Shown: positions 1 through 6,992 of the stretch, piece by piece
Numbering within the stretch: the first letter of the stretch is position 1
Layout of the letters: each line of letters starts with the position of its first letter
Source: Chlorokybus atmophyticus
Lineage: Eukaryota > Plantae > Mesostigma and Chlorokybus algae
Length of the DNA: 6,992 nucleotides
Assembly: GCA_009103225.1 (NCBI GenBank)
Contig: RHPI01000249.1
Span: forward strand, 21,999-28,990
Direction: 5' to 3'
Program-made: the position numbers and the translations under genes
Notes under the pieces: model-generated
Database searches by the model: none
What the model was told of the DNA's origin: nothing
Seen by the model: the letters and a program-made list of their open reading frames with translations, nothing else

Positions 1-295
1 CTCTCTCTCTCGCTCTCTCGCTCTCTCGCTCTCTCGCTCTCGCTCGCTCTCGCTCGCTCTCTCTCGCTCTCTCGCTCTCGCTCTCTCTCGCTCTCTCTCG
101 CTCTCGCTCTCTCTCGCGCTCTCTCTCTCTCTCGCTCTCTCTCTCGCTCTCGCTCTCGCTCTCTCTCTCTCTCGCTCTCTCTCTCGCTCTCGCTCTCGCT
201 CTCGCTCTCGCTCTCTCGCTCTCTCGCTCTCTCGCTCTCTCGCTCTCGCGCTCTCGCTCTCTCGCTCTCTCGCTCTCCCTCCCTCCCTCCCTCCC
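1..295 (+). repeat. Compound (CT)n/(CTCG)n then (CCCT)n microsatellite
   Basis: Seen directly; runs off the window start. Confidence 0.95.
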
Positions 296-616: not shown

Positions 617-1099
617 GGTTCAGGTTCATCTCCCACCACACGATCTCCCAAGAAACACGCGTCATTGGAGACGGCTGCGGCTGTCCGCGTGGGCGTGCAG
701 AGCATGTTGGGGTGGAGCGCATCCATGCACAACTTCAACGCTGAGAGTTGTTGTGGTTGTGTTGTTGAATTGGAGCGTGAAACGATAAGTGGTGATGCGA
801 TATGTGACGCAGTTGAAGGTTGCGTGTCTGTTAGCTGATGCTAGCTCACGCTGGCGCTGAGCCTGCCTTGATGGTGTGTTGCATGCGCTGTGCATGTGTT
901 GGGATGCCTCGCACAAGTGCAAACGCATGCATGCACACATGTGCACACAATCTGTAGTAGTAGCATACAGCCTGTTGTCACCTGATTGACATGTTGGTGT
1001 TAGTTAGTAGTTGCAATAGTCCTGTAGTCAGTGACCATGGCTATGTGTTCATCAATGTTCTCAACCAGCCCGACCTTAACATCCTCAACACATGCCAGC

Positions 1100-4000
1100 T
1101 CAATTCAACTCGTCGAGAAGGCGGATGGCTCCCTCCTCGCGAATCAGGCGCTTTGCGTCATTGTCCAATGCAACATTGCCAAGTGCGCGTGCAGCCCAGG
1201 CCTTGCCTTTGTCCGTGCCGGATGTGAGCAGCGCGACCAACGGGGGTATGCCACTCGCCTCGCGGATAAGGCGATTTGCGTCAAAGTTTAATGCAACTGT
1301 GCCCAGTGCGTATGCAGCCCAGTCCTTGCCGTCGTCCGTGCCGGATGTGAGCAGCGCGACCAATGGGGGTATGCCACTCGCCTCGCGGATCAGGCGCTCT
1401 GCGTCATTATCAAATGCAACTGTGCCCAGTGCGTATGCAGCCCAGGCCTTGCCTTTGTCCGTGCCGGATGTGAGCAGCGCGATCAGTGGGGGTATGCCAC
1501 CCTCCTCGAGAATCAGGCGCTCTGCGTCATCGTCAAGTGCAACATTTCCTAGTGCGCGTGCAGCCCAGGCCTTGCCGTCGTTCGTGCCGGATGTGAGCAG
1601 CGCGACCAACGGGGGTATGCCACTCGCCTCGCGGATCAGGCGCTTTGCGTCCTTATCAAATGCAACATTGCCCAGTGCGTGTGCAGCCCAGGCCTTGCCG
1701 TCGTCCGTGCCGGATGTGAGCAGCGCGACCAGCGGGGGTATGCCACCCTCCTCGCGAATCAGGCGCTTTGCGTCATCGTCACGTGCAACATTGCCCAGTG
1801 CGCGTGCAGCCCAGGCCTTGCCGTCGTCCGTGCCGGATGTGAGCAGCGCGACCAATGGGGGTATGCCACGCGCCTCGCGGATCAGGCGCTTGGCGTCCTT
1901 ATCAAATGCAACATTGCCCAGTGCGTGTGCAGCCCAGGCCTTGCCGTCGTCCGTGCTGGATGTGAGCAGCCCGACCAGCGGGGGTATGCCACCCTCCTCG
2001 CGAAGCAGGCGCTTTGCGTCATCGTCACGTGCAACATTGCCAAGTGCGCGTGCAGCCCAGGCCTTGCCGTCGTCCGTGCCGGATGTGAGCAGCGCGACCA
2101 ACGGGGGTATGCCACTCGCCTCGCGGATCAGGCGCTTTGCGTCATCGTCAAATGCAACATTGCCCAGTGCGTGTGCAGCCCAGGCCTTGCCGTCGTCCGT
2201 GCCGGATGTGAGCAGCGCGACCAACGGGGGTATGCCACTCGCCTCGCGGATCAGGCGCTTTGCGTCATTATCAGATGCAACAATGCCAAGTGCGCGTGCA
2301 GCCCAGGCCTTGCCTTTGTCCGTGCCGGATGTGAGCAGCGCGACCAATGGGGGTATGCCACGCGCCTCGCGGATCAGGCGCTTGGCGTCCTTATCAAATG
2401 CAACATTGCCCAGTGCGTGTGCAGCCCAGGCCTTGCCGTCGTCCGTGCTGGATGTGAGCAGCCCGACCAGCGGGGGTATGCCACCCTCCTCGCGAAGCAG
2501 GCGCTTTGCGTCATCGTCACGTGCAACATTGCCAAGTGCGCGTGCAGCCCAGGCCTTGCCGTCGTCCGTGCCGGATGTGAGCAGCGCGACCAATGGGGGT
2601 ATGCCACGCGCCTCGCGGATCAGGCGCTTGGCGTCCTTATCAAATGCAACATTGCCCAGTGCGTGTGCAGCCCAGGCCTTGCCGTCGTCCGTGCTGGATG
2701 TGAGCAGCCCGACCAGCGGGGGTATGCCACCCTCCTCGCGAAGCAGGCGCTTTGCGTCATCGTCACGTGCAACATTGCCAAGTGCGCGTGCAGCCCAGGC
2801 CTTGCCGTCGTCCGTGCCGGATGTGAGCAGCGCGACCAATGGGGGTATGCCACGCGCCTCGCGGATCAGGCGCTTGGCGTCCTTATCAAATGCAACATTG
2901 CCCAGTGCGTGTGCAGCCCAGGCCTTGCCGTCGTCCGTGCTGGATGTGAGCAGCCCGACCAGCGGGGGTATGCCACCCTCCTCGCGAAGCAGGCGCTTTG
3001 CGTCATCGTCACGTGCAACATTGCCAAGTGCGCGTGCAGCCCAGGCCTTGCCGTCGTCCGTGCCGGATGTGAGCAGCGCGACCAATGGGGGTATGCCACG
3101 CGCCTCGCGGATCAGGCGCTTGGCGTCCTTATCAAATGCAACATTGCCCAGTGCGTGTGCAGCCCAGGCCTTGCCGTCGTCCGTGCTGGATGTGAGCAGC
3201 CCGACCAGCGGGGGTATGCCACCCTCCTCGCGAAGCAGGCGCTTTGCGTCATCGTCACGTGCAACATTGCCAAGTGCGCGTGCAGCCCAGGCCTTGCCGT
3301 CGTCCGTGCCGGATGTGAGCAGCGCGACCAACGGGGGTATGCCACTCGCCTCGCGGATCAGGCGCTTTGCGTCCTTATCAAATGCAACATTGCCCAGTGC
3401 GTGTGCAGCCCAGGCCTTGCCGTCGTCCGTGCTGGATGTGAGCAGCGCGACCAGCGGGGGTATGCCACCCTCCTCGCGAATCAGGCGCTTTGCGTCATCG
3501 TCACGTGCAACATTGCCCAGTGCGCGTGCAGCCCAGGCCTTGCCGTCGTCCGTGCCGGATGTGAGCAGCGCGACCAACGGGGGTATGCCACGCGCCTCGC
3601 GGATCAGGCGCTTTGCGTCATTATCAGATGCAACATTGCCAAGTGCGCGTGCAGCCCAGGCCTTGCCGTCGTCCGTGCCGGATGTGAGCAGCGCGACCAA
3701 CGGGGGTATGCCACTCGCCTCGCGGATCAGGCGCTTTACGTCATTATCAGATGCAACAATGCCAAGTGCGCGTGCAGCCCAGGCCTTGCCTTTGTCCGTG
3801 CCGGATGTGAGCAGCGCGACCAGCGGGGGTATGCCACCCGCCTCGCGGATCAGGCGCTTTGCGTCATCGTCACATGCAACATTGCCCAGTGCGTGTGCAG
3901 CCCAGGCCTTGCCGCCGTCCGTGCCGGATGTGAGCAACGCGACCAGTGGGGGTATGCCACCCTCCTCGAGAATCAGGCGCTCTGCGTCATCGTCAACTGC

Positions 4001-5187
4001 AACATTGCCTAGTGCGCGTGCAGCCCAGGCCTTGCCGTCGTTCGTGCCGGATGTGAGCAGCGCGACCAACGGGGGTATGCCACCGGCCTTGCGAATCAAC
4101 ACTCTCGAATTTACACCTTCCTGGACTGACCGCGCCAATTCCGACAACGCCCGAGCGGCTTGCTCCTTGACGTTGTTTGCGCCACCTCTGACCAGTGCAA
4201 TCAGCTGTGGAATCGCCCCAGCCAGGACAATGCCCACTGCACTACAAGAGTCCTCACCGAGCAGGTCCGCCAATGCTCCCGCCGCAACCTCTTTGCTGTT
4301 GGGCGTGCCGTGGTGGAGTGTGTCGACAAAGTCCATTATCCTATTGTTGACACCTTCAATTGGCACAGCTTCAACAGGCTCTTCACTTGCGGATAGCCTC
4401 ATGAGATAACTATCCAGATGTTGCAGTATGGATGAGAGAATGTCATTGGGGCGTTGTTCGACAGCCAGTCGCAGCAGGTCCAGTTGTTGCTGCAGAGCGC
4501 GACGCCCCTCGTCAGACTGCGCGACGCCAAGCAGACCGGCAGCCGCTAAGTTGCTGGCAGAGCGCAGCTTCAGCTCCTCGAGTAGCGTCTTCACAAAGCT
4601 ATCAATGCCTTGCGATTGGCAAATGCACTCCAACCAGTAGTGCATGCTGTTGATGTCGCCTATGCATGCATCCACCCGCATGGAGCCATCCAATACGTGT
4701 TGCTCGTTGCGTCCTGCCAACCCTAGGATAAGTAACATAGCCATGTGCACGGATCCAGACCCAGTACTGGCCAGGTATATAAGCAATGAACACATAACCA
4801 TGACGCCAACAAGCATACCAGAAGTCGCTGCGAGTGGAGGCTGCCCAGTGAGGCCCTCCGTTGCTGGAGCACGAATCTCCCCCGCCAACGATCCCATGTT
4901 TACTTCGTCAGTATCCGAGATTGAGCCTGGTTCCGACCGCCGTCCGTGGCTCAGGTCCTAAGATGCAGGTAGGGTGCAATCAGCATCTTGTAAAAACCAG
5001 GCATGAAGGCTGTACTTAGACACAATAGCGATTAGGGCCGGGCTGAGATTGCACCAAGGTGGGGTTTGGTGGGTATGTTGAAGAAACGCACCTGCTCCTG
5101 AAGTTGCGGCTGTGGTTGAAGAATTTGGGCATTGTGCTGACTTGAGAATTGCAGATTCATGAGGAAAGGATGCTGCGACATGACACA

Positions 5188-5218
<31 letters not shown>

Positions 5219-6814
5219 GAGAGACAGTCAGAAGAAACCTCGAGTCATGCCAACCTGTAATGGCAACCTGTGTTTGGCACCTGTAGCAACTCCTCAGCCG
5301 TTGGGCGCTCTTGAGGATTGCTGCACAATGTGGCAAAGTGAGCACCCGCAAGAAAGATGCACGATCACAAAAAGATTGATTCAAACATGATTCCAACGTC
5401 TGACCGCCTGAAGCAACGCTGAAGAAAGTCCTTGCACTCTGGTGACAGATGCTCTGGAATCTCGGGACAGTCATCTTCGCTGAAGATGCGTTTCCCAATA
5501 GCATAAAAATTCAACTGTTGCAAGCGTGTCCATAAGAACATGCAACCCGACAAGATGGAGAGATACAGCAGAGGGACGTCACTTACCCCGCTACGGTTAA
5601 CTCCTTGATACGAAGGAGGATTCCCAGTAGCCATCTCTATCACCGTGCAGCCTATACTCCAAATGTCCGCCCGGCAGTCAGCTCCGACTTGTCGGAGCAC
5701 CTCCGGCGCCATGAATGGCACTGTGCCCAGTAGTGTCCTATGTTTCACTTGCGAGTTCTGCACAGGCGCCAGCGCACAACACACTGATGAGAACTTGGGG
5801 ATTGAGCGTTGTGGTTGTTGAACGAACCGACACTGACAAATGAGCTTTGCAAAGACAATGATAATCAGACATACACGTGCAGGACTTACCACGGCCTTGG
5901 AAGCGCCAAAATCAGCAAGCTTGATGACAGTACCATTCCACTGCTTGTCCAGCAATATGTTCGCGCCTTTGATGTCGCGATGCATGATATTCACCCCATG
6001 CATGCAATTCACTGCCTCCAACAGTAGCCGCGTATATCTTTGGACAGCCTGCACGTGCGTAGTCAGAGGCGACACCAACGTGCACTAAGCCTTGCCATGA
6101 ACCCACCGTTTCATCAAAGCCTGATGGGTGGAAGGTTCTCAGCTCCTTCTCGATAGATCCAGCTGGAAGGTACTCCATCACAATGTGAAGAAAGTCACCT
6201 GCCTCCTTCCACCCGTAGTAACGCTGGCACACCAATCGTAAGACAACATGTTAGCACTGTTGGCATCAAGAACCCTGCAACGGCATGATTCGGCCAACAC
6301 TGACTAAGTCATGGTATGCTGATTTGACAGGGGTGACAGGAAGTACTGATGTACAGAGCAGCAGGTGCGACAAGGAAGCAGCATACCACAATGTTGGGAT
6401 GCATGATCTCGCTTAGAGTGTTGACCTCTCGTTTCGCTGCTTCCAGCGCCTCGCGCTCTCTGCTACCTCGCTCGTTGGCTGGACCAATGTAAATCTGGTA
6501 CAGCAACACCATTGAATATGCGCATCGTCATGCATGATGTGCGCGGCGCAGCAAAATGATGATGTTAACGTGACGACATGTCATATCACTCACCAGCTTT
6601 ACCGCTAGAACACTCCCATTCCCTTGCCTAACCTTCACCACTGTACCGCACGCTCCAATCCCTATGACTTCTTCGCTTCCCACAATGTCGTACTCGGGTA
6701 GCTCCTGCGGCGCTGTCACACAATCAGGGGAGTTGCTTATCAGAGTGGCCACGCGCGCGAAAGTACCTCTCGATTAGGGGTCATGGAGGTCAAGCCAGGG
6801 TCAACAGGGAGCAT
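1100..6814 (-). CDS. Spliced gene: STE11/MEKK (MAP3K)-like Ser/Thr kinase fused to a C-terminal array of 24 near-identical Armadillo repeats (~1,560-1,600 aa)
   Basis: Hand-built exons (minus strand): 6814-6767, 6704-6594, 6494-6387, 6223-6107, 6048-5890, 5757-5587, 5514-5405, 5320-5281, 5172-5092, 4957-4819, 4722-1100 (stop TGA 1102-1100). All introns are GT..AG, 58-163 nt, and the exons join in frame to give all kinase subdomains in order, then the long ARM frame. The start is uncertain: there are in-frame ATGs at 6814 and 6784, and the frame is open further upstream. The last intron (4818-4723) is optional because it is in frame and stop-free. Confidence 0.85.
1130..4081 (-). repeat. Coding tandem array of 24 x 123-bp (41-aa) Armadillo repeats
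   Basis: The GGCATACCCCC (GIPP) motif recurs every 123 bp from 4081 to 1252, with no indels. Consensus GIPPLVALLTSGTDDGKAWAARALGNVAxDxDAKRLIREx(G/S/R) matches the ARM pattern (G-x-I-P-x-L-V-x-L-L ... A-x-x-A-L-x-N-x-A). Confidence 0.95.
2360..3343 (-). repeat. Higher-order 246-bp (two-ARM) tandem repeat, four copies
   Basis: Units 7-14 alternate between two types with identical amino acids. The off-frame 77-aa ORFs at 2374, 2620, 2866 and 3112 are spaced 246 bp apart. A fifth copy lies at 1868-2113. Confidence 0.9.
4082..4342 (-). other. Two diverged Armadillo repeats preceding the homogeneous array
   Basis: RIMDFVDTLHHGTPNSKEVAAGALADLLGEDSCSAVGIVLAG (4342-4217) and AIPQLIALVRGGANNVKEQAARALSELARSVQEGVNSRVLIRKAG (4216-4082) align to the unit consensus but are far more divergent. 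Confidence 0.75.
5092..5172 (-). CDS. Exon 9: kinase C-terminus (HPFL) and Gln-rich linker
   Basis: Acceptor TCGCAG|CAT; HPFLMNLQFSSQHNAQILQPQPQLQEQ; donor GTGCGT at 5091. The next acceptor TCTTAG|GAC at 4958 is exactly 60 nt, in frame, before the ATG at 4897 of the long ORF. Confidence 0.8.
5183..5217 (+). repeat. (AC)n/(GCAC)n microsatellite inside intron 8
   Basis: acacacac followed by about 6.75 copies of gcac; lies just upstream (on the gene strand) of the acceptor at 5173. Confidence 0.9.
5281..5320 (-). CDS. Kinase exon 8 (40 nt, missed by the ORF track): subdomain XI
   Basis: Acceptor GTGCAG|C completes the Arg codon, then NPQERPTAEELLQ (canonical xDPxxRPTAxELL motif); donor GTGCCA at 5280. 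Confidence 0.88.
5405..5514 (-). CDS. Kinase exon 7: subdomains X-XI
   Basis: Acceptor CAACAG|TTG; LNFYAIGKRIFSEDDCPEIPEHLSPECKDFLQRCFR plus CG; phase-2 donor GTCAGA at 5404. Confidence 0.82.
5587..5757 (-). CDS. Kinase exon 6: activation segment, APE, subdomain IX
   Basis: Acceptor GTGCAG|AAC; NSQVKHRTLLGTVPFMAPEVLRQVGADCRADIWSIGCTVIEMATGNPPSYQGVNRSG; donor GTAAGT at 5586. DIWSxGCTVIEMATG is a MAP3K-like signature. Confidence 0.88.
5890..6048 (-). CDS. Kinase exon 5: catalytic loop and DFG (subdomains VI-VII)
   Basis: Acceptor GTGCAG|GCT with CTGAC branch-like motif upstream; AVQRYTRLLLEAVNCMHGVNIMHRDIKGANILLDKQWNGTVIKLADFGASKAV; donor GTAAGT at 5889. HRDIKGANIL is typical of STE11/MEKK-type kinases. 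Confidence 0.92.
6107..6223 (-). CDS. Kinase exon 4: hinge (subdomain V)
   Basis: Acceptor TGCCAG|CGT; RYYGWKEAGDFLHIVMEYLPAGSIEKELRTFHPSGFDET; donor GTGGGT at 6106. Confidence 0.88.
6387..6494 (-). CDS. Kinase exon 3: alphaC and HPNIV (subdomains III-IV)
   Basis: Acceptor TACCAG|ATT; IYIGPANERGSREREALEAAKREVNTLSEIMHPNIV; donor GTATGC at 6386. Confidence 0.88.
6594..6704 (-). CDS. Kinase exon 2: subdomains I-II
   Basis: ELPEYDIVGSEEVIGIGACGTVVKVRQGNGSVLAVKL contains the GxGxxG loop and the AVK lysine. Followed by donor GTGAGT at 6593. Confidence 0.85.
6767..6814 (-). CDS. Putative exon 1 (MLPVDPGLTSMTPNRE)
   Basis: In-frame ATGs at 6814 and 6784. Donor GAG|GTACTT at 6766 and acceptor CCGCAG ending at 6705 give a 62-nt phase-0 intron that joins to ELPEYD. 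Confidence 0.55.
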
Positions 6815-6923
6815 GCGCACTACCGGCGACCCTCCTTGCCCTTGAGCTGCGAGTGTCTGTGGGGGACTGCACGCATGCTCGAACGCGCCAAGCAGCACCT
6901 AGCATGCCAACGACAGTGCCATT

Positions 6924-6992
6924 AGAGGGGGAGAGAGAGGGAGAGAGAGAGGGAGAGAGAGGGAGAGAGAGAGAGAGGGAGGGAGAGAGAGA
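6924..6992 (+). repeat. Pure-purine (GA)n/(GGGA) microsatellite
   Basis: Seen directly; only G and A from 6924 to the window end. Confidence 0.95.

What the first reader, a model, noticed from the sequence alone, without database searches (positions are those of the whole stretch)
1100..6814. MAP3K-like kinase fused to 24 near-identical ARM repeats: candidate repeat-shuffling sensor kinase
Seen: an intact STE11/MEKK-like kinase (AVK, HRDIKGAN, DFG, APE) sits in one reading frame with 24 ARM units that are nearly identical at the DNA level, including most synonymous sites, with no indels or stops over ~3 kb. Established: kinase+ARM fusions exist (S. pombe Cdc7, Aspergillus SepH, plant MAP3K-epsilon), but their ARM repeats are old and divergent. 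Highly internally conserved repeats maintained by concerted evolution are characteristic of non-self sensors such as fungal HET-E-type WD40 NLRs, and of TAL effectors. Inference: this may be a sensor+kinase receptor whose specificity is reshuffled by unequal recombination in the ARM array, possibly in innate immunity or allorecognition of a protist or alga.
Basis: partly seen in the sequence, partly recalled or inferred. Interest (0 to 1): 0.8.

Follow-up and report, generated by a model that had tools for sequence, protein, structure and literature searches.

The report
Algal MAP3K kinase with 24 near-identical ARM repeats
An early-branching green alga (Chlorokybus) expresses a signalling kinase joined to 24 almost identical protein-binding repeats that differ mainly at the residues expected to touch a partner, as in fungal immune receptors; what it binds and what it does are unknown.

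Summary
On the minus strand lies one expressed, spliced gene. Ten short exons in the window (4818-6899) encode an N-terminal stretch, an intact MEKK/STE11-type kinase and part of a linker. A last exon (1100-4712) holds two degenerate ARM repeats and 24 tandem 123-bp ARM units. The units are 83-100% identical in DNA (mean 91%). Transcript contigs from two studies join all kinase exons to the ARM exon.

The long ORF 1100-4897 contains an in-frame intron (4713-4817). The 5' exon(s) lie beyond the window. The public gene model (Chlat1 7328, 941 aa) wrongly splices out 18 units.

The kinase is closest to plant ANP/NPK1-type MAP3Ks (42-47% identity) rather than Cdc15-type kinases, and has no close orthologue among 1.84 billion representative proteins.

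Variation among units is mosaic and concentrates on the helix-3 groove positions that bind ligand in importin-alpha. Six other repeat-homogenised ARM arrays, from oomycetes, a volvocine alga, a dinoflagellate and one unnamed source, vary at the same positions; some are fused to kinase or HET domains.

The "repeat-shuffling sensor kinase" idea is partly supported. An immune role, strain polymorphism and a paralogue family sharing the unit are not shown.

The scan had already noted this stretch (s1-079240) and a similar TPR array in the same genome (s1-177205).

The parts
6766..6899 (-). Exon encoding part of the N-terminal extension (residues 99-142 of P0001). The transcript continues into a 5' exon outside the window.
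   Evidence: Spliced RNA contigs and their loose end. The exon translation matches P0001 exactly.
6594..6703 (-). Kinase exon: Gly-rich loop and the AVK lysine (subdomains I-II).
6387..6494 (-). Kinase exon: alpha-C glutamate region (subdomains III-IV).
6106..6223 (-). Kinase exon: hinge region (subdomain V).
5890..6047 (-). Kinase exon: HRDIKGAN catalytic loop and DFG.
5587..5757 (-). Kinase exon: activation segment, APE, subdomain IX.
5405..5514 (-). Kinase exon: subdomains X-XI.
5281..5320 (-). Exon of 40 nt: end of the kinase domain.
5091..5172 (-). Exon of 82 nt: start of the linker after the kinase.
4818..4956 (-). Linker exon.
4713..4817 (-). In-frame 105-nt intron inside the long ORF 1100-4897. 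Its hydrophobic translation is not part of the protein.
   Evidence: The joint is present in three RNA runs, and P0001 lacks these residues.
4082..4712 (-). First part of the last exon: helical linker plus two degenerate ARM repeats (N-terminal cap). It is 41% identical to the matching part of the paralogue P0026.
1130..4081 (-). 24 tandem ARM units of 123 bp (41 aa), 83-100% identical, with no indels.
2360..3343 (-). Units 7-14: four copies of a 246-bp two-unit (A-B) block that differ by one base. This is the most recent expansion, or the part most exposed to assembly error.
1817..4066 (-). The 2250 nt (18 units' worth) that the public gene model P0001 treats as an intron. RNA contigs run past its supposed donor site.
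1100..1129 (-). Short C-terminal cap (9 codons) and stop codon.

Best explanation
This is one expressed, Chlorokybus-specific gene for a cytoplasmic MEKK/STE11-type MAP3K. The kinase has every catalytic motif. Its C-terminal regulatory part is an armadillo solenoid of about 26 repeats.

Shown here:
- The gene structure and the kinase-to-ARM transcript.
- The MEKK-type kinase.
- The canonical ARM fold.
- The homogenised, mosaic array, with a very recent four-fold expansion of a two-unit block.
- The concentration of differences on the helix-3 groove positions.

Inferred:
- The array is kept uniform and reshuffled by unequal crossing-over and gene conversion.
- The groove binds an extended peptide or protein. 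The backbone-binding Asn ladder is kept in 20 of 24 units, an invariant Trp/Lys lies beside it, and the pocket residues at unit positions 15, 22, 26 and 29 vary.
- Ligand binding recruits or activates the kinase, which then feeds a MAPK cascade.

The ligand is unknown. A non-self ligand is possible but not demonstrated.
For: - Transcript: spliced RNA contigs from two studies (2086 and 1996 nt) cover all kinase exons and run into the ARM exon. All nine listed joints have GT..AG ends on the minus strand, and a tenth intron (5173-5280) was read from the sequence, where a skipped repeat hid the joint. Every exon matches the public protein P0001 exactly.
- Kinase type: the best solved relatives are MAP3K2 and MAP3K5. 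The best database hits are ANP/NPK1-type MAP3Ks at 42-47% identity. The ML tree puts the kinase inside that set (SH-aLRT 97), apart from a Cdc15/MEN-type clade and from the kinases of other ARM fusions.
- Lineage specificity: no closer relative exists among 1.84 billion representatives. The linker has no orthologue.
- Fold: the AlphaFold model of the cap plus 8 units has pLDDT 90 and TM 0.8-0.9 to a consensus-designed ARM protein and to ODAD2.
- Contact positions: from the alignment to 4RV1 and the importin-alpha motif as I recall it, unit position 22 falls at the Trp and position 26 at the Asn of the WxxxN motif.
- Selection: pN/pS is 3.2 on six of the seven face codons (15, 18, 19, 22, 26, 29), against 0.49 on the rest. 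Entropy on the seven-position face is higher than elsewhere (p 0.002).
- Mosaic: all four gametes occur in 39 of 120 site pairs, giving Rm of at least 6.
- Other lineages: six other homogenised ARM arrays vary at the same positions (p 2e-6 to 0.0075).
Against: - No ligand, phenotype or expression response is known.
- The selection signal is weak when counted as events: 15 non-synonymous to 2 synonymous on the face, against 17 to 10 elsewhere (Fisher p 0.066). Exposed positions evolve faster anyway.
- The face was set by helical periodicity around the WxxxN motif. It was not measured on model coordinates, which were not available to scripts.
- The number of units rests on one assembly.
- RNA contigs break at the first unit, so a 24-unit mRNA is supported only by roughly 15-20 times higher word depth over the unit than over the unique part. 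The tool warns that this depth is not a copy number.
- The AU test does not reject a Cdc15-type placement of the kinase (p 0.23), because the branch is very long.
Confidence: 0.6

Rival explanations
1. Non-self sensor. The ARM array recognises pathogen or conspecific molecules, and the kinase starts an immune or cell-death response. This would be analogous to fungal HET-E-type receptors but without a NOD domain.
For: - Internal repeat conservation reaches the threshold used for fungal NLRs, over 85% (PMC4986451).
- The hypervariable positions lie on the binding face.
- Related ARM arrays are fused to HET (P0054, P0069), TIR (P0081, P0086) and MLKL_N (P0057; marginal in P0003).
- An earlier scan note reports a TIR-NB-ARC-TPR gene with 40 near-identical repeats in the same genome (s1-177205; not tested here).
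Against: - No NOD domain, and no paralogue family sharing the unit.
- No strain polymorphism data and no expression data under challenge.
- The partner-domain argument rests on distant proteins (25-48% identity) whose kinases are unrelated to this one (25-29% identity).
- Several homogenised ARM arrays have no known effector domain.
Confidence: 0.25
2. Scaffold or targeting domain for a periodic self ligand. The long uniform solenoid, with its alternating A/B units, docks the MAP3K on a repetitive or polymeric cellular partner, such as a cytoskeletal or flagellar structure or a long disordered repeat protein. It would give localisation and would not be a receptor.
For: - The alternating two-unit periodicity and the strictly conserved scaffold, Lys17, Trp19 and Asn ladder fit a periodic ligand.
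- The second-best structural and sequence match is the axonemal docking protein ODAD2/ARMC4.
- From my own knowledge: ANP/NPK1-type MAP3Ks are localised through C-terminal partner-binding regions, and mammalian MEKK1 carries a tubulin-binding helical-repeat domain.
Against: - A conserved self ligand predicts purifying selection on the contact positions. Those positions are the most variable ones here and in six other arrays.
- There is no orthologue outside Chlorokybus, which is unusual for a core cytoskeletal function.
Confidence: 0.2
3. Neutral runaway expansion. The array is an unstable coding minisatellite that grew recently, and the variation pattern only reflects which surface positions tolerate change.
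For: - Four two-unit blocks differ by one base in 984 bp, which implies very recent duplication.
- Overall pN/pS is 0.80, which is also compatible with relaxed constraint.
- The event-count test is only marginal.
Against: - The frame is intact over 2952 bp, with no indel or stop.
- Non-face codons are under purifying selection (0.49).
- The same positions vary in independent arrays of distant lineages.
- The gene is expressed.
Confidence: 0.12
4. The unit count or order is partly an assembly artefact. The gene is real, but the true array is shorter or differently ordered, as in the 941-aa public model.
For: - Perfectly repeated 246-bp blocks are the kind of sequence that assemblers mis-size.
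- Short-read DNA and RNA contigs all break at the array.
- The public model has only about six units.
Against: - The public model's deletion has exact GT..AG, in-frame ends inside this same sequence. That points to a collapsed-transcript alignment and not to a shorter genome.
- RNA contigs read through its donor site.
- Word depth over the unit is roughly 15-20 times that of the unique part in three RNA runs. This is only a rough measure.
Confidence: 0.15
5. It is the Chlorokybus orthologue of Cdc7/SepH/Cdc15/MAP3K-epsilon, a cytokinesis kinase with an ARM tail.
For: - The domain order is the same (kinase, then ARM).
- The AU test does not reject grouping with Cdc15-type kinases (p 0.23).
Against: - None of the top 120 kinase hits carries an ARM-type Pfam domain or a MAP3K-epsilon/Cdc7 name. 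Most are named ANP/NPK1-type and the rest carry no source name.
- Cdc15-type representatives are 33-36% identical, against 42-47% for the ANP-like set, and form a separate clade with SH-aLRT 99.
- The ARM region's relatives are not MAP3K-epsilon tails.
- An earlier scan note reports separate MAP3K-epsilon homologues in this genome (s1-190635; not tested here).
- No plant MAP3K-epsilon sequence could be fetched for the tree.
Confidence: 0.04

Closest known systems
Plant ANP/NPK1-type MEKK MAP3Ks (STE11 group)
   Same: The catalytic domain is closest to these: 42-47% identity, and the ML tree places it in the same clade at SH-aLRT 97. It has the HRDIKGAN/DFG/APE motifs, and its best solved relatives are MAP3K2 and MAP3K5.
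   Different: It sits on a very long branch and falls outside the Chara-plus-land-plant ANP clade in the first tree. It has a 150-aa N-terminal extension and an ARM array where ANP/NPK1 kinases have their regulatory tail. No orthologue is known outside Chlorokybus.
MAP3K-epsilon / S. pombe Cdc7 / Aspergillus SepH / Cdc15 (kinase plus ARM-like tail)
   Same: An N-terminal STE-group kinase followed by armadillo-type helical repeats.
   Different: The kinase is less similar (33-36% to Cdc15-type representatives) and lies in another clade in the ML tree. From my own knowledge, the tails of those proteins are old and divergent. Here 24 units are 83-100% identical.
Fungal NLRs with highly internally conserved WD40/ANK/TPR repeats (HET-E/HNWD; Dyrka et al. 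2014, PMC4986451)
   Same: Repeats about 85% or more identical, a mosaic of units, and hypervariable positions on the binding surface. The inferred mechanism, unequal recombination plus diversifying selection, is also the same.
   Different: The repeat type is ARM. There is no NACHT or NB-ARC domain, and the effector is a MAP3K kinase. No paralogue family exchanging repeats was found, and repeat-number polymorphism was not tested.
Importin-alpha and designed armadillo repeat proteins (peptide binders)
   Same: The same fold: TM 0.6-0.8 to these proteins, and the best sequence match is the consensus design 4RV1. The Asn of the WxxxN motif is kept in 20 of 24 units, which suggests binding of an extended peptide.
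   Different: The Trp position is Arg, His or Tyr, and an invariant Trp sits one turn earlier. The array has 24 uniform units, against about 10 diverged ones in importin-alpha. It is fused to a kinase.
Homogenised ARM arrays of other protists: Nothophytophthora TKL kinase-ARM (P0003, P0037), Pleodorina HET-ARM (P0054, P0069), Cladocopium ARM protein (P0002), unnamed P0083
   Same: A 41-42-aa unit with the same scaffold motifs. Identity between successive repeats is 63-85%. The same positions (19, 22, 25, 26, 29) are hypervariable.
   Different: They have other or no effector domains. Their kinases are unrelated (25-29% identity, TKL-like). They belong to other lineages, so the fusions arose independently.

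Membership tests
Armadillo repeat proteins (Pfam PF00514) | Tandem units of about 42 aa with three helices, matching the Arm profile and forming a right-handed superhelix. | tested here: met
   Arm at E 1e-148 with 19 stretches. The AlphaFold model has pLDDT 90 with a regular H2-H3-H1 pattern. TM is 0.8-0.9 to solved ARM proteins.
MEKK/STE11-group MAP3K | Active Ser/Thr kinase domain with STE11-type motifs, closest to known MAP3Ks. | tested here: met
   Pkinase at E 2e-62. The Gly loop, AVK, HRDIKGAN, DFG and APE are all present. The best PDB hits are MAP3K2 and MAP3K5, and the best database hits are named MAP3Ks.
ANP/NPK1 orthologue group | Placement inside the streptophyte ANP/NPK1 clade. 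| tested here: inconclusive
   The kinase is inside the broad viridiplant ANP-like set (SH-aLRT 88 and 97). Its position within that set is unstable on a very long branch: outside Chara plus embryophytes, and beside Thecamonas.
MAP3K-epsilon / Cdc7 / SepH / Cdc15 | Kinase domain orthologous to the Cdc15/Cdc7/MAP3K-epsilon clade. | tested here: not met
   No top-120 hit carries an ARM-type Pfam domain or a MAP3K-epsilon/Cdc7 name. Cdc15-type representatives are 33-36% identical and form a separate clade at SH-aLRT 99. Caveats: the AU test gives p 0.23, and no plant MAP3K-epsilon sequence was in the tree.
MAP3K-epsilon / Cdc7 / SepH / Cdc15 | Long, divergent, non-periodic ARM/HEAT tail conserved across eukaryotes. 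| tested here: not met
   The tail is a uniform 24-unit array. The linker and cap have no orthologue.
Receptors with highly internally conserved repeats (fungal HET-E/HNWD type) | Repeats over 85% identical across at least 100 aa (criterion of PMC4986451). | tested here: met
   Mean pairwise amino-acid identity is 85.6% over 984 aa, and many unit pairs are 95-100% identical.
Receptors with highly internally conserved repeats (fungal HET-E/HNWD type) | Hypervariable, positively selected positions on the ligand-binding surface. | tested here: inconclusive
   Variation is concentrated on the helix-3 face (entropy p 0.002; pN/pS 3.2 against 0.49). The event count is marginal (p 0.066), and no multi-allele site test was possible.
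Receptors with highly internally conserved repeats (fungal HET-E/HNWD type) | Central NOD (NACHT or NB-ARC) domain. | tested here: not met
   Pfam finds only the kinase and ARM/HEAT-type families in P0001 and in the window ORFs.
Receptors with highly internally conserved repeats (fungal HET-E/HNWD type) | Repeat-number polymorphism between strains. | not testable with these tools
Receptors with highly internally conserved repeats (fungal HET-E/HNWD type) | A paralogue family that exchanges repeats. | tested here: not met
   Among proteins of 662-2107 aa, only P0001 itself carries this unit. The one Chlorokybus relative (P0026, 47% identity) has divergent repeats. Shorter paralogues would have been missed.

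The most novel reading that the evidence does not exclude
This gene may be one example of an undescribed receptor class found in several protist lineages. The class would have no NOD domain and would use an armadillo array. The array would be kept uniform and reshuffled by recombination, with its specificity set by a few helix-3 groove residues per repeat. It would be coupled directly to an effector: a MAP3K here, TKL kinases in oomycetes, HET in a volvocine alga. The class would have arisen several times independently, as a parallel to NLR-type receptors.
Probability: 0.25. Interest if true: 0.85.

Novelty: new variant of a known kind. Interest (0 to 1): 0.62.

Why it matters
Homogenised repeat arrays with hypervariable contact residues are a hallmark of receptors that must keep generating new specificities, such as fungal HET-E-type NLRs and TAL effectors. 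In six full-text paper searches I found no description of this pattern for armadillo repeats, for a receptor wired directly to a MAP3K, or for a streptophyte alga near the base of the plant lineage.

If the array senses variable ligands, it offers a simple sensor-to-MAPK route that bypasses NOD domains. It also offers a natural counterpart to designed modular armadillo peptide binders. The same positional pattern in oomycete, volvocine and dinoflagellate proteins makes the idea testable across lineages.

There is also a practical point. The public gene model is wrong by 18 repeats, so surveys based on annotated proteomes will miss arrays like this one.

Tried and rejected
- **Cdc15/MAP3K-epsilon orthology.** The ML tree and similarity scores argue against it, but the AU test was inconclusive (p 0.23). 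Plant MAP3K-epsilon sequences could not be fetched by name, so they are not in the tree.
- **Orthologues of the linker and cap (P0001 455-700).** Only the protein itself and two weak ARM hits were found.
- **Exhaustive scan with the kinase domain.** No close relative. Higher total scores belong to proteins with several kinase domains.
- **Genomic context and other assemblies.** The look-up of encoding contigs has neither P0001 nor P0026 on record.
- **N-terminal domain of the paralogue P0026.** Pfam gives only a weak coiled-coil hit. AlphaFold on the single sequence failed (pLDDT 39), so no fold search was run. The Atlas feature search gives sub-threshold leads only (0.87).
- **Rfam scan of the window.** Nothing.
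- **Repeats outside the array.** Only microsatellites.
- **Literature.** No paper was found on homogenised ARM arrays, on Chlorokybus ARM kinases, or on oomycete kinase-ARM or MLKL-ARM proteins. The Chlorokybus genome paper was not among the listed results, so I make no claim about the sequencing technology.
- **Groove-facing residues from model coordinates.** Not possible, because model files are not exposed to scripts. The face was defined from helical periodicity anchored on the WxxxN alignment instead.
- **Joined spliced model.** Exons were checked one by one against P0001, and domain searches used the database protein P0001 by reference.
- **Complex prediction.** Not used, because no candidate partner exists.
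Full report
**What is in the window**

The window comes from the streptophyte alga Chlorokybus. Earlier notes of the scan say so, and the best protein match is model 7328 of the Chlat1 proteome (P0001).

Tandem Repeats Finder reports a 123-bp period with 24.1 copies and no indels at 1131-4098. A minus-strand ORF runs from 4897 down to the stop at 1100. Cut in register, the array is 24 units of 41 codons at 1130-4081.
- Pairwise DNA identity is 83-100%, mean 91%. Mean amino-acid identity is 85.6%.
- There are 17 distinct DNA units.
- Units 8, 10, 12, 14 and 18 are identical to each other. So are 9, 11 and 13, and so are 7 and 17. Units 7-14 are therefore four copies of a 246-bp A-B block that differ by one base.

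Pfam gives Arm at E 1e-148 on this ORF and Pkinase on the upstream ORF pieces.

**Gene structure and expression**

Contigs of four public runs were laid on 4000-6900. Two runs from different studies each hold one spliced contig (2086 and 1996 nt), and a third run holds shorter ones.
- The contigs list nine joints, all with GT..AG ends on the minus strand. The intron between the 40-nt and 82-nt exons (5173-5280) was not listed, because the tool skipped the repeat at 5178-5232. I read its GT..AG ends from the sequence, and the unaccounted contig length (122 nt) equals the two exons together.
- The exons in the window are 6766-6899, 6594-6703, 6387-6494, 6106-6223, 5890-6047, 5587-5757, 5405-5514, 5281-5320, 5091-5172 and 4818-4956. 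The last exon starts at 4712.
- The kinase and the ARM exon are therefore on one mRNA.

Three corrections follow.
- The long ORF contains an in-frame 105-nt intron (4713-4817), so its hydrophobic stretch is intronic.
- The transcript continues 5' of 6899 into sequence that is not in the window. Reverse-complemented, its loose end reads as the residues that precede this exon in P0001.
- The contigs stop at 4054, just inside unit 1, as expected when short reads meet a repeat.

A fourth run is DNA-like. It covers introns and is identical to the window.

**The public model is wrong in the array**

Each window exon, translated on its own, is an exact substring of P0001. Whole-domain searches used P0001 by reference.

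P0001 jumps from position 5 of unit 1 to position 18 of unit 19. That amounts to a 2250-nt "intron" (4066 down to 1817) with GT..AG ends, in frame.
- The RNA contigs read 12 nt past that donor site in the unspliced form.
- Word depth over the unit is about 15-20 times that of the unique part of the same transcript in three runs. This is a rough figure, and the tool warns it is not a copy number. It fits many units in the mRNA better than six.

The exact count of 24 still rests on one assembly.

**The kinase**

P0001 residues 153-418 match Pkinase at E 2e-62. The Gly loop, AVK, the alpha-C Glu, HRDIKGAN, DFG and APE are all intact.
- The best solved relatives are MAP3K2 and MAP3K5, followed by STE20-type kinases.
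- In the 5.8-billion-protein search, most named hits are ANP/NPK1-type plant and green-algal MAP3Ks at 42-47% identity. None of the top 120 carries ARM domains, and none is a MAP3K-epsilon-type protein.
- An exhaustive HMMER scan of 1.84 billion representatives finds no closer relative.
- Three fungal representatives served as the Cdc15-type reference. One is named "Protein kinase of the Mitotic Exit Network" by its source. The other two carry only generic names and were taken as Cdc15-type because their kinase sits at the N-terminus and they group with it. They are 33-36% identical to the query.
- In the ML tree these three form a clade of their own (SH-aLRT 99). The Chlorokybus kinase falls inside the ANP-like set (SH-aLRT 97) on a very long branch.
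- The AU test does not reject forcing it together with the Cdc15-type clade (p 0.23). The phylogenetic exclusion is therefore likely but not proven.
I could not test that.
- Kinases of other kinase-ARM proteins (oomycete and unnamed) are only 25-29% identical and sit far away in the tree. Such fusions arose independently.

**The ARM solenoid**

An AlphaFold model was made of the cap plus units 1-8 (425 aa, single sequence).
- It has pLDDT 90 and pTM 0.85, with a regular three-helix pattern per unit.
- It superposes on a consensus-designed ARM protein (4RV1) and on ODAD2/ARMC4 at TM 0.8-0.9, and on importin-alpha and Vac8 at about 0.73.
- In unit numbering (position 1 is the Gly of GIPPL), helix 2 covers 2-11, helix 3 covers 14-27, and helix 1 of the next repeat covers 31-39.

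The sequence alignment to 4RV1, combined with the well-known importin-alpha motif (my own knowledge), maps the contact positions.
- Position 22 falls at the Trp and position 26 at the Asn of WxxxN.
- Positions 19, 25 and 29 complete the groove face.

**Where the units differ**

Of the 41 codons, 17 vary in amino acid and 6 vary only synonymously. The most variable positions are:
- 29, with six residues;
- 31, with four residues;
- 22, with R, H or Y;
- 41, 15 and 26.

Lys17 and Trp19 are invariant. Asn26 is kept in 20 of 24 units, so a backbone-binding Asn ladder is largely preserved.

Between distinct units pS is 0.10 and pN is 0.083, giving a ratio of 0.80. On six face codons (15, 18, 19, 22, 26, 29) the ratio is 3.2, against 0.49 elsewhere.

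For the later tests the face was fixed in advance at seven positions (15, 18, 19, 22, 25, 26, 29).
- Entropy is higher on the face than at the other positions 1-30 (p 0.002).
- Counted as minimum mutational events, the contrast is 15 non-synonymous to 2 synonymous on the face, against 17 to 10 elsewhere. The Fisher test is only marginal (p 0.066).

The units are mosaics. All four gametes occur in 39 of 120 pairs of informative sites, and Rm is at least 6 within 123 bp. Look-alike units are scattered along the array (1 resembles 21, 3 resembles 15, 5-6 resemble 19-20, 7-8 equal 17-18). This is what unequal crossing-over and gene conversion produce. Recurrent mutation cannot be fully excluded.

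**Relatives of the array**

The ARM exon finds 1165 proteins.
- Only one other Chlorokybus protein is among the best 120. P0026 shares the linker and cap (41% over 214 aa, E 4e-27) and a divergent ARM region, but has a different helical N-terminal part of about 320 aa in place of the kinase. The ARM module has therefore been combined with two different heads in this genome.
- No paralogue carrying the same uniform unit was seen.

Other lineages have homogenised ARM arrays of their own. Identity between successive repeats is 63-85%.
- Nothophytophthora P0003 (TKL-like kinase, plus an MLKL_N match just below threshold) and P0037 (kinase).
- Pleodorina P0054 and P0069 (HET domain above threshold).
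- Cladocopium P0002, unnamed P0083 and unnamed P0048, with no recognised effector.
- ARM proteins with TIR (P0081, P0086) and MLKL_N (P0057) also occur, but their repeats are not uniform.

In all six arrays tested, the same helix-3 face positions are the variable ones (p 2e-6 to 0.0075), and position 22 or 29, usually both, ranks among the top five. These arrays lie in different lineages and have different or no partner domains. The shared pattern is therefore independent support that the groove is where they diversify.

**Interpretation**

Settled:
- A real, expressed, lineage-specific MEKK-type MAP3K fused to a long, recently expanded, homogenised ARM solenoid.

Likely:
- The array evolves by unequal recombination.
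- Its peptide-binding groove is where the units are allowed, or driven, to differ.

Inferred only:
- Ligand binding by the array controls or localises the kinase.

It rests on analogy with fungal receptors that have highly conserved repeats (PMC4986451), on the partner domains of distant arrays, and on an untested note that this genome also holds a TIR-NB-ARC-TPR gene with 40 near-identical repeats (s1-177205). Against it:
- there is no NOD domain;
- no family shares the unit;
- there are no polymorphism data.

I rate that narrower claim at about 0.25.

The rivals are these:
- A scaffold for a periodic self ligand. The A/B alternation and the invariant Lys/Trp/Asn fit, but variable contact residues do not.
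- Neutral runaway expansion. The intact frame, the purifying selection off the face and the cross-lineage pattern argue against it.
- An inflated unit count in the assembly.

**Novelty**

The gene is in a public proteome, but mis-modelled and uncharacterised. In six searches of the paper library I found no description of homogenised ARM arrays, of their groove-position variability, or of a MEKK-ARM fusion of this kind.

I class it as a new variant of a known kind: a receptor-like protein with highly internally conserved repeats. The new elements are the repeat type, the effector and the absence of a NOD domain.

The same scan had already flagged this stretch for its helix-3 variation (s1-079240), which I tested and confirm.

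Noticed in passing
window 1817-4066 (minus strand): The public Chlat1 gene model 7328 (P0001, 941 aa) removes 2250 nt of the array, 18 units' worth, as an in-frame GT..AG 'intron'. RNA contigs read through the supposed donor. Proteome-based surveys will therefore under-count such repeats.
   Followed up: yes
P0026 (Chlat1 338), residues 1-320 and 317-521: A second Chlorokybus protein shares the pre-array linker and cap (41% identity) and a divergent ARM region. In place of the kinase it has an all-helical N-terminal part with a Gly/Ala-rich hydrophobic segment. The Atlas feature search gives only sub-threshold leads (0.87) to cephalotoxin-like/rapunzel and Cry-toxin N-terminal helical domains. 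The AlphaFold model failed (pLDDT 39).
   Followed up: partly
P0003, P0037, P0054, P0069, P0083, P0002, P0048 (database proteins): Homogenised 41-42-aa ARM arrays occur in an oomycete genus, a volvocine alga, a dinoflagellate and unnamed samples. Some are fused to TKL-like kinase or HET domains. In the six arrays tested (all but P0048) they vary at the same helix-3 positions (19, 22, 25, 26, 29) as the Chlorokybus array.
   Followed up: partly
window 1-293, 5184-5217 and 6924-6992: Long CT-rich microsatellite (CTCTCGCT-type) downstream of the gene's 3' end. A GA-rich microsatellite, its complement, lies in the intron at the right end. A (CACG)n run lies inside the intron 5173-5280, and the reads tool skipped around it.
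   Followed up: no
window 1092-4409 (+) and 1679-4012 (+): Two very long plus-strand ORFs (1105 and 777 aa) run antisense through the array. They are a by-product of a stop-free repeat unit in several frames. They have no other support, and the transcripts are spliced on the minus strand.
   Followed up: partly
window 5281-5393: One RNA contig of run X3 runs from the 40-nt exon on into the intron 5321-5404. This is either an unspliced precursor or intron retention.
   Followed up: no
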